A program made the translations under genes and the position numbers. 41,487 nt of DNA, taken from Octopus bimaculoides. Taxonomy: Eukaryota. Under the pieces are notes generated by a model. That model ran no database searches and was not told the origin of the DNA. It saw nothing but the letters and a program-made list of their open reading frames with translations. Positions 6,335 through 19,595 of this stretch are shown one piece after another. Position 1 is the first letter of the stretch; the number at the start of each line of letters is the position of its first letter. The stretch is taken from NCBI RefSeq assembly GCF_001194135.2, contig NC_068986.1, forward strand, positions 67,661,839-67,703,325, written 5' to 3'.

Positions 6335-6379
6335 GACGAGAAAGAACAGACGATGAGAATCATGGGATATTTACATCTG
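6335..6379 (+). CDS. nAChR-like exon, 45 nt: DEKEQTMRIMGYLHL (beta1-beta2, loop D)
   Basis: Acceptor ctatattttcAG at 6333-6334 and donor GTtagt at 6380. Size and sequence match the conserved 45-nt DEKNQ-type exon of nAChR genes. Confidence 0.88.
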
Positions 6380-17788: not shown

Positions 17789-19595
17789 ATATATATATAT
17801 ATGTATATATATATATAAAATTAGTGTACGTTTATACACAAAAGAGGTGACCCTAACAGGACACCTTACATTCTAATATACATCGATATACAAGAACAGT
17901 GCTATCTGTGGTATTATTCCTCGACAGTAATTTCCTCAGGGATTGGCCGGTGTGTGCACCATCAACATGTTGAGTTTCTCCCAGCGGATCGCATGTTGTA
18001 TACTTACATGTGTTTAGTAGTCGAAGTAGGGCCGTTTAAGGAAGCATTTTCCGACATCGGATTATGGGCCGTCTTATGCAGTTTGATCACTTTTATGTTT
18101 CGAATATACAGTCGCTTAGATACAGATGGCGCGTAGCCGTTGTGTGCTAAGTTCTCGAGGAACCGTTTGGTGTTGTGAAGCTAAATAAATATATATATAT
18201 ACATATTGAAATCGATGCAATCAACAAACCCCACCCCCTTAAAATTGCTGCTGTTGCGCTAAACTTGAAGCAATTATTATTATCATTATAATTAAAAGTA
18301 TTTAAACTGCGACGATCTGTAGGAATCGTTAGCGCGTTGGACAAACTGCTTTTACTCTTTTACTCTTTTACTTGTTCCGGTCATTTGACTGCGGCCATGC
18401 TGGAGCACCGCCTTTAGTCGAGAAAATCGACCCCAGCACTTATTCTTTGGAAGCCTAGTACTTATTCTATCGATCTCTTTTTGCCGAACCGCTAAGTTAC
18501 GGGGACGTAAACACACCAGCATCGGTTGTCAAGCGATGGTGGGGGGACAAACACACACACACACATATATATATATATACATATATACGACAGGCTTCTT
18601 TCAGTTTCCGTCTACCAAATCCACTCACAAGGCTTTGGTTGGCCCGAGGCTATAGTAGAAGACACTTGCCCAAGGTGCCACGCAGTGGGACTGAACCCAG
18701 AACCATGTGGTTGGTAAGCAAGCTACTTACCACACAGCCATTCCTGTGCCTATGGCATTTACTCTGGCATTTCCTGCTTAGTGGCATTTACTCTGGCTTA
18801 TCACGTTGTGTGTTCAAATTCGGCAGAGGCCGACGTTGCATTTCAGCTTCACGAAGTTCGATAAAATAAGTACCAGTTGAGTACTCGCGTCATATTTGAT
18901 GCAGTCATTACTACTATTACTAGTATTTGCATTATTATTGTTCTTGTGTTTGTTGTTATATTGCGGGGCTCCTAAGTCATACCCTCGATGTTTTCATGTC
19001 AAATGACAACATTGTCGTTCTTCCTTTCAGGCGAATAGAAAGTAACAGATTGAGAGTGATATTATACTAATATTATAAATCATAACTATCATTGTTTTCT
19101 TATTAATAAGAACAAGAATAATAATGGCAATGACGGGTATGATTGTTTTGTAAATGATGCATGTTGTTATTGTCCTGGTTCATATTGTTATAACTCGTCT
19201 TCATTAATTAGATCTCCAGAGATAACAATGTCACTTCAGTGCAGAATTTTCTTCTTGTTTTCCAGAATTTGACCATTACGTTGAAAACAATGAATGGGAA
19301 ATTGAAAGCACAATGACAGGCAATTTAAAAGTCAACCATCAATCGAGAGAAAGTGAGAAAACCTACAGTAATGCTGTTTTCTCGATAAAACTAAAGAGAC
19401 GGCGTACATTCCACATAGTGTCTACCTACATCCCGTTCGTACTTCTAGCATTGCTTAATCTAGCTGCTCATGTTGTTCCAGTCATGTCAGGCGAGAAACT
19501 TATGCTAGCAACGACCACTTTGCTAGCATATGCAGTACTTCTAAACGACATCAATCGAAAGATTCCAGGCAACTCCGCCACCACATCAGTTCTTG
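6335..19595 (+). CDS. Partial atypical nAChR-like Cys-loop ligand-gated ion channel subunit; join(6335..6379,11440..11549,15124..15338,19266..19595); 5' and 3' exons not found
   Basis: Four exons with AG/GT boundaries and consistent phases (0/0, 0/2, 2/1, 1/1) give 700 nt, 233 codons, no stop. Motifs: DEKEQ, WxDxxLxW-P-xYGG, WTP, Cys-loop C-x13-C with FPFD, GSWT, ENNEW, LKRR, M1 proline, SGEK-M2 with L9' and P23'. Introns are 5060, 3574 and 3927 nt. Confidence 0.95.
9364..9713 (+). mobile_element. tRNA-derived SINE, family A (diverged copy)
   Basis: tRNA-like head (gtgtggtaag...gattcagttcc), core gcctcgggccggccaatgccttgtgagtggatttggtagacggaaactgaaagaagc matching the reverse complement of 18349-18751, and a degraded ccagcatg...agtctaatgact tail. 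Confidence 0.85.
10443..10658 (+). mobile_element. SINE family B, copy 1
   Basis: aggcggcaagctagcagaattgtt...gttcaaattccgccgaggtcgacttggcttttcatcctttcggggtcga...taagtacc; same family as copies 2-4. Confidence 0.85.
10660..10883 (-). mobile_element. SINE family B, copy 2
   Basis: Reverse complement of copies 1 and 3 (gaaaggcgaagtcgacctcggcggaatttgaac...acgattctaccagctcgacgcc), with a different tail subtype. Confidence 0.85.
10907..11116 (+). mobile_element. SINE family B, copy 3
   Basis: aggcggcgagctggcagaatcgttag...gaggtcgactttgcctttcatcctttcgggatcgataaattaagtacc. Confidence 0.85.
11137..11359 (-). mobile_element. SINE family B, copy 4 (old, degenerate)
   Basis: gcacaaggcc...tttttatcgattccagaggaaagaaaagcaaagttaac...aaataccgcaag...taacgatc resembles the reverse complement of copies 1 and 3. 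Confidence 0.55.
11366..11389. repeat. (ATC)8 microsatellite
   Basis: Direct reading; ends 50 nt upstream of the exon at 11440. Confidence 0.9.
11440..11549 (+). CDS. nAChR-like exon, 110 nt: DWTDHQLKWAPDRYGGLKHLVLPTDKVWTPQLLLGN(S) (loop A)
   Basis: Acceptor tttctttttcgtAG at 11438-11439 and donor GTaagc at 11550. Matches the 110-nt WxDxxLxW...WxPDxxLxN exon typical of nAChRs. Absent from the ORF track (no Met). Confidence 0.95.
12490..12880 (-). mobile_element. tRNA-head SINE-like repeat, family C
   Basis: Minus strand starts with a B-box-like gtcgtaggatcgtggtttcgatttccagaccgggcgttgtgagtgtttattgagcg. The GC-richer body contrasts with AT-rich flanks. Recognised as an octopod interspersed repeat from memory only. 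Confidence 0.6.
15124..15338 (+). CDS. nAChR-like exon, 215 nt: loop E, Cys-loop CRLNITSFPFDRQTC, loop B GSWT
   Basis: Acceptor ttcattctgttcAG at 15122-15123 and donor GTaaga at 15339. Split codon TC|A = Ser joins the previous exon in frame. Lies within track ORF 15098..15799. Confidence 0.97.
16830..17010 (-). mobile_element. SINE family A, degenerate 3' half
   Basis: actcttttacttttgtcattcatttgactgc...ttacggggac aligns by eye to 18355-18510. Confidence 0.65.
17061..17186 (+). mobile_element. SINE family A, 5' fragment
   Basis: agtggctgtatggtaag...gggttcaaacccactg...cttcgggccgaccagagcctt matches the head and core of the 18349-18751 copy. Confidence 0.75.
18349..18751 (-). mobile_element. 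tRNA-derived SINE, family A (apparently full length, ~400 bp)
   Basis: Minus strand reads a tRNA-like head (tggctgtgtggtaag...gggttcagtcc), the core shared with the 9364 and 17061 copies, an internal (AT/GT) tract, and a 3' tail ggcggtgctccagcatggccgcagtc ending in (AGTAAAAG)3. Confidence 0.9.
19266..19595 (+). CDS. nAChR-like exon, 330 nt: loop F end, loop C, M1, M2, M2-M3 loop
   Basis: Acceptor ttttcttcttgttttccAG at 19264-19265 and donor GTtagt at 19596. Split codon G|AA = Glu. Translation EFDHYVENNEWEIESTMTGNLKVNHQSRESEKTYSNAVFSIKLKRRRTFHIVSTYIPFVLLALLNLAAHVVPVMSGEKLMLATTTLLAYAVLLNDINRKIPGNSATTSVL. Confidence 0.97.

What the first reader, a model, noticed from the sequence alone, without database searches (positions are those of the whole stretch)
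6335..19595. Atypical nAChR-like subunit with a dismantled acetylcholine-binding site: candidate orphan or chemosensory channel
Seen: the spliced protein keeps the structural motifs (Cys-loop C-x13-C, FPFD, WTP, GSW, ENNEW, SGEK). Loop C (TGNLKVNHQSRESEKTY) has no cysteines and no Y190 equivalent. Loop A reads WTPQLLLGNS instead of WxPDIxLYN (Y93 to G, D to Q), loop D has Y in place of W55, and loop B is GSWTE instead of GSWTY. Only the W149 and Y198 equivalents remain. Established: vicinal Cys and the aromatic box define ACh-binding alpha subunits, and cephalopods carry expanded atypical nAChR-like subunits lacking these residues, including the sucker chemotactile receptors (CRs). Inference: this subunit cannot form a principal ACh site and may sense another ligand. 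It could instead be a structural non-alpha subunit.
Basis: partly seen in the sequence, partly recalled or inferred. Interest (0 to 1): 0.82.

Follow-up and report, generated by a model that had tools for sequence, protein, structure and literature searches.

The report
Conserved octopus non-alpha nicotinic-receptor-like subunit gene
This is a real, expressed octopus gene for a nicotinic-receptor-family channel subunit that has lost the residues needed to bind acetylcholine on its own; it is an old, single-copy, strongly conserved gene, probably a partner subunit of a mixed receptor and not one of the octopus "taste-by-touch" sensors.

Summary
Four + strand exons (6335-6379, 11440-11549, 15124-15338, 19266-19595) have AG/GT sites and matching phases. 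All five N gaps lie in introns, and RNA contigs confirm every junction. The product equals residues 85-317 of the NCBI models 'neuronal acetylcholine receptor subunit beta-3' of Octopus bimaculoides and O. sinensis. The first exons and the M3-M4 exons are not in the readable window.

The residue mapping is right: no vicinal Cys, Y190>S, Y93>G, D89>Q, W55>Y, with W149 and Y198 kept.

The chemosensory reading is not supported. Chemotactile receptors are intronless and expanded, with hydrophobic pockets under diversifying selection. This gene is intron-rich and single-copy. It is 95% identical in Argonauta and about 82% identical in a lineage with saturated synonymous sites (M1-M3 96-99%). Loop C is polar and still under purifying selection.

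Of the 100 nearest relatives, 88 also lack the vicinal Cys, so the feature is ordinary for lophotrochozoan nAChR-like genes.

Most likely this is a non-agonist-binding partner subunit of a heteromeric cation channel. An orphan ligand-gated channel is the main rival. Seen in passing: a conserved 8-aa alternative insert in the M2-M3 linker and probable A-to-I editing.

The parts
6335..6379 (+). Exon a (45 nt, phase 0/0): DEKEQTMRIMGYLHL. It encodes the beta1-beta2 loop (DEKEQ) and loop D, with Tyr in place of W55 (MGY, 6362-6379).
   Evidence: AG/GT sites. RNA contigs cover 6334-6380 and continue into exon b. Alignment to alpha6.
6380..11439 (+). Intron of 5060 nt with no N.
11440..11549 (+). 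Exon b (110 nt, phase 0/2): DWTDHQLKW...VWTPQLLLGN(S). Loop A with D89>Q and Y93>G.
   Evidence: Both junctions seen in RNA contigs. tblastn with the orthologue.
11550..15123 (+). Intron of 3574 nt holding the assembly gaps 12976-13328 and 14014-14229.
   Evidence: The RNA contig joins 11549 directly to 15124.
15124..15338 (+). Exon c (215 nt, phase 2/1). It encodes loop E, the Cys-loop CRLNITSFPFDRQTC (15224-15268), loop B GSWTED (15281-15298) and the start of loop F. RNA/DNA A>G differences lie at 15187, 15202 and 15227.
15339..19265 (+). Intron of 3927 nt holding the gaps 15479-15719, 16467-16476 and 17412-17737.
   Evidence: RNA contigs join 15338 to 19266.
19266..19595 (+). Exon d (330 nt, phase 1/1). 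It encodes ENNEW, loop C TGNLKVNHQSRESEKTY (19316-19366; no Cys, no Y190), pre-M1 KLKRRR, M1 (19406-19480), M2 SGEKLMLATTTLLAYAVLLNDINRK (19487-19561; -1' Glu, 9' Leu, 20' Arg, -4' Met) and the start of the M2-M3 linker.
   Evidence: Column counts in 100 relatives.

Best explanation
What it is (shown): the middle four exons of an expressed, intact, intron-rich gene for a cation-type Cys-loop receptor subunit of the nicotinic family. NCBI's pipeline calls it 'neuronal acetylcholine receptor subunit beta-3' in O. bimaculoides and O. sinensis. It is a single-copy lineage conserved across cephalopods, with no close relative elsewhere.

How it most likely works (inferred): it is a non-alpha subunit that cannot bind agonist on its principal face. 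It co-assembles with ACh-binding alpha subunits into heteropentameric cation channels, either as a complementary-face partner or as an accessory 'fifth' subunit.

In that role it would keep the assembly, coupling and gate elements: the Cys-loop FPFD, the beta1-beta2 DEKEQ, the pre-M1 Arg, -1' Glu, 9' Leu and 13' Val. It would tune conductance and gating through clade-specific pore features: Arg at 20', Met at -4', and a very basic helix before M4. Further tuning could come from an alternatively spliced 8-residue insert in the M2-M3 linker.
For: Identity:
- Pfam Neur_chan_LBD E=1.2e-42.
- The product is an exact match to residues 85-317 of XP_052824798.1/XP_052824799.1 (O. bimaculoides) and XP_029637862.2/XP_036360202.1 (O. 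sinensis).
- All junctions are confirmed in RNA.
- Exon d is present in at least 20 RNA or RNA-like runs of at least 8 studies.

No principal ACh site: Y190>S, C192/193>E/S, Y93>G, D89>Q.

Functional constraint:
- Against the distant orthologue, synonymous sites are saturated (pS 0.89) while dN is 0.12. In M1-M2 there are 6 nonsynonymous against 43 synonymous differences.
- M1-M3 is 96-99% identical, the ECD about 80% and the ICD 80%.
- Between L001 and L002, omega is about 0.02-0.07.

The pocket is the least constrained part:
- Loop C is 29-35% identical between the two deep lineages.
- The positions equivalent to 57 and 93 change charge (H/D, G/D).
- Loop B and loop E are invariant.
- This is the reverse of what a receptor for a conserved transmitter should show.

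Pore:
- -1' Glu and 9' Leu are kept in 99 of 100 relatives and here.
- Arg at 20' occurs in 5 of 100 relatives and Met at -4' in 4 of 100. These are essentially only this clade.
- A ring of five Arg at the outer mouth would hinder cation flow in a homomer. One or two copies would merely tune a heteromer. This rests on the established role of charged rings in nAChR conductance (my own knowledge).

Gene structure is of the ancestral intron-rich type, not the retroposed type (PMC6896357).
Against: - No partner subunit was identified, and no co-expression or assembly data could be obtained. The tissues of the RNA runs are coded.
- The complementary face is also altered (W55>Y).
- The closest solved sequence is Alpo4, a homomeric orphan (PMC10338036).
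- Loops A, B, D and E, including their unusual polar substitutions, are conserved across deep lineages. This could reflect a conserved non-ACh ligand and not only structural constraint.
- There is no non-cephalopod orthologue, so this is not a 'conserved molluscan beta subunit'.
- The pore-charge argument is an inference from other receptors.
Confidence: 0.5

Rival explanations
1. Orphan ligand-gated cation channel. The remodelled, polar orthosteric pocket keeps Trp B, Tyr C2 and an aromatic residue at loop D. It would bind an endogenous or environmental ligand other than ACh, and the subunit would gate as a homomer or with a like partner, as proposed for Alpo4.
For: - The best PDB sequence match is the orphan Alpo4 (E=3.8e-39 and 8.1e-51).
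- Like Alpo4, it sits as an isolated long branch: distance at least 1.36 to every non-orthologue, with an unresolved sister group.
- The unusual substitutions in loops A, B and D (Q, E, Y) are conserved in all four orthologues.
- The gating machinery is intact.
Against: - Pocket-lining positions are the most variable part of the protein between deep lineages (loop C 29-35% identity; H/D at position 57; G/D at position 93). Everything else is conserved.
- The 20' Arg, -4' Met and basic pre-M4 helix are unfavourable for a homomeric cation pore. This point is an inference.
- Alpo4 keeps its full aromatic cage (PMC10338036). This protein does not.
Confidence: 0.27
2. Member or close cousin of the cephalopod chemotactile receptors (CRs): a sensory channel of the suckers or another chemosensory organ that detects poorly soluble molecules.
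For: - It lacks ACh-binding residues, as CRs do.
- It is from a cephalopod.
- Loop C evolves 3-5 times faster than the rest of the protein.
Against: - It has at least five introns at ancestral positions, whereas CRs are intronless (PMC11526382, PMC13174522).
- It is single-copy, with no tandem neighbour in 41 kb.
- It is 95% identical between Octopus and Argonauta. Loop C omega is about 0.07, which is not diversifying.
- Loop C is polar and charged, whereas CRT1 has a hydrophobic aromatic pocket (10.1101/2025.03.03.641191).
- No CR structure appears among the best 60 PDB sequence hits or the best 50 fold hits.
Confidence: 0.05
3. Decaying or non-functional relic (pseudogene, or an artefact of assembly across gaps).
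For: The window lacks the first and last exons and is full of gaps.
Against: - Full-length open transcripts and gene models exist in several species.
- Every junction is confirmed in RNA.
- dN is far below a saturated dS.
Confidence: 0.01

Closest known systems
Vertebrate non-agonist-binding nAChR subunits (accessory beta3/alpha5; complementary beta2/beta4/gamma/delta/epsilon; structural beta1)
   Same: - The cationic Cys-loop architecture, the GEK motif and the 9' Leu gate.
- No functional principal face.
- These subunits work only inside heteromers.
- The ancestral multi-exon gene structure with 45-nt and 110-nt exons (exon sizes from my own knowledge).
- NCBI's pipeline names the gene beta-3.
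   Different: - It is not an orthologue. The beta3 ECD (8a5u_B, E=2.1e-30) scores below alpha6, alpha1 and Torpedo beta.
- NCBI names other isoforms of the same gene eat-2, alpha-5 and alpha-6.
- Vertebrate non-alpha subunits keep D89, Y93 and W55. Here they are Q, G (or D) and Y.
- It carries 20' Arg, -4' Met and a basic pre-M4 helix.
Alpo4, orphan nAChR-like receptor of the annelid Alvinella pompejana (PDB 8bx5; PMC10338036)
   Same: - It is the best solved-structure sequence match.
- It is lophotrochozoan.
- It has no vicinal Cys.
- It sits in an isolated phylogenetic position.
- Its ligand is unknown.
   Different: - Identity is only about 35-40% over the aligned core.
- Alpo4 keeps the aromatic cage (F103, W159, Y199, Y205, W65), whereas this protein keeps three of five positions.
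- Alpo4 was studied as a homopentamer.
Cephalopod chemotactile receptors (CRT1, CRB1 and the CR family)
   Same: They are nAChR-derived cephalopod subunits that have lost their ACh-binding residues.
   Different: - CRs are intronless, expanded (up to 26 in O. bimaculoides) and sucker-enriched.
- CRs have hydrophobic pockets under positive selection (PMC11526382; 10.1101/2025.03.03.641191).
- This gene is intron-rich, single-copy, slowly evolving and has a polar pocket.
Expanded lophotrochozoan nAChR-like genes (Jiao et al. 2019, PMC6896357; MolluscaGenes clades, PMC13174522)
   Same: - The nearest 100 database relatives are mostly bivalve and gastropod members of this radiation.
- Of these, 88 lack the vicinal Cys and only 12 have Tyr at the Y93 position.
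   Different: - Most expanded members are intronless or intron-poor and sit in tandem arrays.
- This gene is intron-rich, solitary and has orthologues only in cephalopods.

Membership tests
Cys-loop / pentameric ligand-gated ion channel, cationic nicotinic branch | Extracellular ligand-binding-domain fold with a C-x13-C Cys-loop | tested here: met
   Pfam PF02931 E=1.2e-42. The Cys spacing is 13. The Foldseek top 50 are all nAChR chains.
Cys-loop / pentameric ligand-gated ion channel, cationic nicotinic branch | Four transmembrane helices M1-M4 | tested here: met
   M1 and M2 are in the window. PF02932 scores 22.5 bits, below the 28.1 cut-off, because only M1-M2 are present. M3 is seen in RNA contigs beyond exon d. 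M3 and M4 are present in the identical full-length models and in the predicted helices.
Cys-loop / pentameric ligand-gated ion channel, cationic nicotinic branch | Cation-selectivity signature (-1' Glu in GEK) and the 9' Leu gate | tested here: met
   SGEK and 9' Leu are present. Actual ion selectivity was not measured.
Alpha-type (agonist-binding) nAChR subunit | Vicinal Cys192-Cys193 at the tip of loop C | tested here: not met
   Loop C is TGNLKVNHQSRESEKTY. The product has only the two Cys-loop cysteines.
Alpha-type (agonist-binding) nAChR subunit | Aromatic box: Tyr A (93), Trp B (149), Tyr C1 (190), Tyr C2 (198) | tested here: not met
   The residues are G, W, S and Y respectively.
Cephalopod chemotactile receptors (CR) | Intronless (retrogene) coding sequence | tested here: not met
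   There are three introns of 3.6-5.1 kb inside the interval, plus junctions to exons outside it. The criterion comes from PMC11526382 and PMC13174522.
Cephalopod chemotactile receptors (CR) | Lineage-specific expansion, with diversifying selection on pocket residues | tested here: not met
   It is a single orthologue group, and the next relatives are 33-38% identical. There is no neighbouring pLGIC gene. Loop C omega is about 0.07.
Cephalopod chemotactile receptors (CR) | Placement inside the CR clade in a phylogeny | not tested
   CR sequences could not be obtained. The primary papers are not held. No CR structure appears among the best 60 PDB sequence hits or the best 50 fold hits.
Cephalopod chemotactile receptors (CR) | Sucker-enriched expression and gating by poorly soluble ligands | not testable with these tools
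   The RNA runs are coded without tissue labels. No electrophysiology is available here.
Accessory or complementary non-alpha subunit of heteromeric nAChRs | Lacks a principal agonist site but keeps the assembly, coupling and pore elements | tested here: met
Accessory or complementary non-alpha subunit of heteromeric nAChRs | Physical co-assembly with alpha subunits and no function alone | not testable with these tools
   This needs co-expression, co-purification and electrophysiology.
Vertebrate CHRNB3 orthologue (as the NCBI name suggests) | Specific closest similarity or orthology to beta3 | tested here: not met
   The beta3 ECD scores E=2.1e-30, against alpha6 at 1.3e-36 and Alpo4 at 3.8e-39. 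Isoforms of the same gene are named beta-3, eat-2, alpha-5 and alpha-6.

The most novel reading that the evidence does not exclude
A cephalopod-specific, single-copy orphan Cys-loop receptor whose remodelled polar pocket binds a ligand other than acetylcholine. That would make it a new transmitter- or modulator-gated channel of the cephalopod nervous system. Its gating would be diversified by a strictly conserved 8-residue alternative insert (DWSFWTSQ) in the M2-M3 coupling linker and by A-to-I recoding (R>G) at the start of the Cys-loop.
Probability: 0.2. Interest if true: 0.6.

Novelty: new member of a known kind. Interest (0 to 1): 0.3.

Why it matters
Cephalopods and other lophotrochozoans carry dozens of nicotinic-like subunits of unknown function. 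Only the intronless chemotactile receptors have been deorphanised.

This gene stands out from that crowd. It is old-style in structure, solitary, and extremely conserved in its channel core over a divergence deep enough to saturate synonymous sites. Yet it has neither an ACh site nor the usual pore charge rings.

That makes it a clean candidate for asking how non-binding subunits shape cephalopod cholinergic receptors. If it turns out to gate on its own, it becomes a candidate for finding a new ligand.

The practical value of this check is mainly negative. The gene should not be counted among candidate chemosensory receptors on the strength of its missing ACh residues, because that trait is shared by 88 of its 100 nearest relatives.

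Tried and rejected
Short stretches were used instead.
- The upstream exon end (…DLYLMSITSL), the M3 exon start and the 24-nt insert were searched in the window with mismatches. tblastn was run with the full-length orthologue. None of these is in the readable window.
- CR sequences for a direct phylogeny could not be obtained. The three primary CR papers are not held. The Albertin 2015 genome paper is not held either. The MolluscaGenes supplement is not held. PDB searches with the protein, the full-length orthologue and a 100-sequence profile never listed a CR chain in the best 60. Foldseek did not list one in its best 50.
- A literature search for peptides of this protein found nothing.
- The tissue of expression cannot be read, because run, sample and organism names are coded and the library fields are empty.
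- A neighbour-joining tree of 100 relatives gave 100% support for the cephalopod clade but only 3% for any sister group. No non-cephalopod orthologue can therefore be named or excluded by topology.
- dN/dS between the window and L002 cannot be given as a number, because pS=0.89 is beyond saturation.
- The pseudogene and assembly-artefact readings were rejected.
- The NCBI name 'beta-3' was rejected as evidence of orthology.
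Full report
**1. What is in the sequence**

The window is AT-rich eukaryotic DNA with 12 runs of N. Six-frame motif searches and inspection of splice sites give four + strand exons:
- 6335-6379 (45 nt)
- 11440-11549 (110 nt)
- 15124-15338 (215 nt)
- 19266-19595 (330 nt)

Each is bounded by a polypyrimidine-AG acceptor and a GT donor, and the phases fit (0/0, 0/2, 2/1, 1/1).

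It matches Pfam Neur_chan_LBD at E=1.2e-42 and the start of Neur_chan_memb. It holds just two cysteines, spaced C-x13-C.

**2. The gap question**

The program asked for this to be tested first. The five N runs inside the finding all fall in the second and third introns (569 and 577 N). No exon abuts a gap.

Spliced RNA contigs from several runs read straight through a>b, b>c and c>d. One 1808-nt contig places the four exons at adjoining positions: 355-688, 687-901 and 1011-1057 on the contig, with the 110-nt exon b filling the space between the last two. So no exon is hidden in a gap.

Unspliced DNA contigs of two other studies cover exon c and its flanks without a single difference.

The same RNA contigs continue upstream into an exon ending …DLYLMSITSL. 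Downstream they continue into an exon starting GVCLTMFLVIS (M3). Neither is in the readable window. The interval therefore holds only the middle of the gene.

**3. Identity of the gene**

The product is identical to residues 85-317 of these NCBI models:
- XP_052824798.1 and XP_052824799.1 (O. bimaculoides)
- XP_029637862.2 and XP_036360202.1 (O. sinensis)

All four are named 'neuronal acetylcholine receptor subunit beta-3'.

The name carries no weight. Other isoforms of the same gene are called eat-2, alpha-5 and alpha-6. The human beta3 ECD scores below alpha6, muscle alpha and Torpedo beta.

The old 260-aa UniProt model A0A0L8HPK5 stops at …SVLG, exactly where the window's last exon ends. 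Together with the 2015 DNA and RNA runs of 'organism A', this suggests the window comes from the first O. bimaculoides assembly. That is an inference.

**4. The binding-site residues**

| Canonical position | Here |
|---|---|
| W55 (loop D) | Y |
| D89 (loop A) | Q |
| Y93 (loop A) | G (D in the distant orthologues) |
| W149 (loop B) | kept |
| Y151 (loop B) | E |
| Y190 (loop C) | S |
| C192/C193 (loop C) | E/S |
| Y198 (loop C) | kept |

By the established definition of alpha subunits (vicinal Cys plus aromatic box), this subunit cannot form a principal ACh site.

This is not unusual among its relatives, however. In an alignment of the 100 best single-domain relatives from an exhaustive search of 1.8 billion representative proteins:
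- 88 lack the vicinal Cys.
- Only 12 have Tyr at the Y93 position.
- W149, -1' Glu and 9' Leu are nearly universal.

Those relatives that carry names are bivalve and gastropod members of the known lophotrochozoan nAChR expansion (PMC6896357).

**5. Evolutionary behaviour**

The exhaustive search finds one orthologue group and then nothing above 38% identity. The orthologues are:
- Argonauta hians, 95% identical over the full length.
- Two transcriptome or genome lineages of unidentified species (P0155 and P0002/L002, and L001), 81-82% identical.

In a neighbour-joining tree the four form a clade with 100% bootstrap support. The clade sits on a long stem (distance at least 1.36 to everything else, against 0.04-0.17 within). 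The sister group is unresolved, with 3% support.

Between the window and L002, synonymous sites are saturated (136 of 152 differ) while dN is 0.12. In M1-M2 there are 43 synonymous against 6 nonsynonymous differences.

Identity between the deep lineages, by domain:

| Domain | Identity |
|---|---|
| M1-M3 | 96-99% |
| M4 | 92% |
| ECD | about 80% |
| Intracellular domain | 80% |
| Loop C | 29-35% |

Within the distant lineage (L001 against L002), omega is about 0.07 for loop C and about 0.02 for the rest. Loop C is relaxed but not under diversifying selection. This is an old, single-copy, tightly constrained gene.

**6. Why it is not a chemotactile receptor**

According to the literature held here, CRs have these properties:
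- They are intronless retrogenes (PMC11526382; PMC13174522, citing van Giesen 2020).
- They are expanded, with up to 26 in O. bimaculoides.
- They have a hydrophobic aromatic pocket whose residues are under positive selection (10.1101/2025.03.03.641191).

The present gene differs on each point:
- It has large introns. Its 45-nt and 110-nt exons match the classical nAChR exon 3 and exon 4 sizes (my own knowledge of vertebrate CHRNA genes). This places it among the ancestral intron-rich genes, not the retroposed ones (PMC6896357).
- It has no pLGIC neighbour in 41 kb.
- It barely changes between Octopus and Argonauta.
- It has a polar, charged loop C.

No CR structure appears among the best 60 PDB sequence hits for the fragment, the full-length protein or a family profile. 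None appears among the best 50 Foldseek hits of an AlphaFold model (pLDDT 70-90 in the ECD and M1-M3).

A direct tree with CR sequences could not be made, because those sequences were not obtainable here.

**7. How it probably works**

Everything needed to assemble, to couple and to gate a cation pore is kept:
- Cys-loop FPFD
- beta1-beta2 DEKEQ
- pre-M1 KLKRRR
- GEK with -1' Glu
- 6' Thr, 9' Leu and 13' Val

Two things point away from a self-sufficient receptor for a conserved ligand.

First, the least conserved parts of an otherwise frozen protein are pocket-lining. These are the loop C tip, the position equivalent to 57 (H against D) and the position equivalent to 93 (G against D).

Second, the pore has lost both outer charge rings in a clade-specific way:
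- Arg at 20' occurs in 5 of 100 relatives.
- Met at -4' occurs in 4 of 100, that is, only these orthologues.
- The helix before M4 is QREQRKFQHRRLEGKRRKFFLSK. It carries 10 basic residues and lacks the usual W…D…FxW motif.

By analogy with the charged rings of muscle nAChR and the MA-helix arginines of 5-HT3A (my own knowledge), five copies of such a subunit should conduct cations poorly. One or two copies in a heteromer would tune conductance.

I therefore favour a non-agonist-binding partner subunit of heteromeric, ACh-gated cation channels (about 0.5).

The main rival is an Alpo4-like orphan receptor with its own ligand (about 0.27). It is supported by three points:
- Alpo4 is the best solved match (PMC10338036).
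- The protein sits on an isolated branch.
- The odd residues of loops A, B and D are conserved.

The chemotactile reading gets about 0.05 and the pseudogene reading about 0.01.

**8. Things seen on the way**

(a) RNA contigs of some runs (X18, X20) carry 24 extra bases between exon d and the M3 exon. They encode DWSFWTSQ in the M2-M3 linker.
- This is NCBI isoform X1 in both Octopus species.
- The identical eight residues occur in the distant lineage (P0182, P0184).
- It is therefore a conserved alternative insert in the element that couples binding to gating.

(b) Two RNA samples of one study have G where the genome has A. These samples (X20, X34) also show the highest contig depth for this transcript.
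- The sites are 15187 and 15202 (both synonymous) and 15227 (AGA>GGA, Arg>Gly, next to the first Cys-loop cysteine).
- Their exon d has no difference at all.
- Other RNA runs, two DNA runs and the assembly have A.
- Three clustered sense-strand A>G changes look like cephalopod A-to-I editing. Polymorphism is not excluded without matched DNA.

(c) A decayed non-LTR retrotransposon with a reverse-transcriptase remnant lies at about 33.2-35.9 kb.

(d) Every gap is flanked by TA/CA microsatellites.

**9. Verdict**

The exciting half, a chemosensory CR-like channel, does not.

The gene is already modelled by NCBI, and its kind is known: nicotinic-like subunits without ACh residues in cephalopods and other lophotrochozoans. 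It is an uncharacterised member of a known kind, with some individually interesting traits.

Noticed in passing
window 15187, 15202, 15227 (exon c): RNA contigs of runs X20 and X34 (one study, two samples, highest depth) read G where the genome has A. Two changes are synonymous. The third is AGA>GGA (Arg>Gly), right after the first Cys-loop cysteine. Other RNA runs, two DNA runs and the assembly read A, and exon d of the same contigs has no change. This looks like A-to-I editing. Polymorphism is not excluded.
   Followed up: partly
junction after window 19595 (insert itself not in the readable window): An alternative 24-nt insert encodes DWSFWTSQ in the M2-M3 linker. It is seen in the X18 and X20 contigs and equals isoform X1 of O. 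bimaculoides and O. sinensis. The eight residues are identical in the distant orthologue lineage (P0182, P0184), so the alternative form is conserved.
   Followed up: partly
window 1-6334 and 19596-41487: The exons for residues 1-84 and 318-481 (signal peptide to beta1; M3, intracellular domain, M4) are absent from the readable sequence. They must lie in gaps (for example 1070-2021, 5444-5867, 22345-23288, 36252-36921) or beyond the window. The 2015 UniProt model A0A0L8HPK5 ends at the same exon.
   Followed up: yes
window about 33160-35910, + strand: A decayed non-LTR retrotransposon. Open frames are broken by stops and frameshifts. One joined stretch matches Pfam RVT_1 (E=2.9e-07).
   Followed up: partly
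window 19487-19561 (M2) and orthologue residues about 435-460 (outside window): Clade-specific pore features: Arg at 20' and Met at -4', where relatives have Asp or Glu. In addition, a pre-M4 helix with 10 basic residues lacks the usual W…D…FxW motif.
   Followed up: partly
orthologue intracellular domain (outside window): The M3-M4 intracellular domain is unusually conserved for this family: 95% between Octopus and Argonauta, and 80% to the distant lineage. It includes an invariant SADKLESYVMVDYLRHQQ stretch, which hints at a conserved binding partner.
   Followed up: no
flanks of all N runs; 37700-38160: Each assembly gap is bordered by TA/CA-type microsatellites. A long tetranucleotide-like repeat (translated as …LSIYLSIY…) fills about 37.7-38.1 kb.
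   Followed up: no
annotation of the gene in NCBI: Isoforms of this one gene are named beta-3, eat-2, alpha-5 and alpha-6 in RefSeq. Isoform X3 also differs by 15 residues just after the signal peptide. The automatic names should not be read as orthology.
   Followed up: yes
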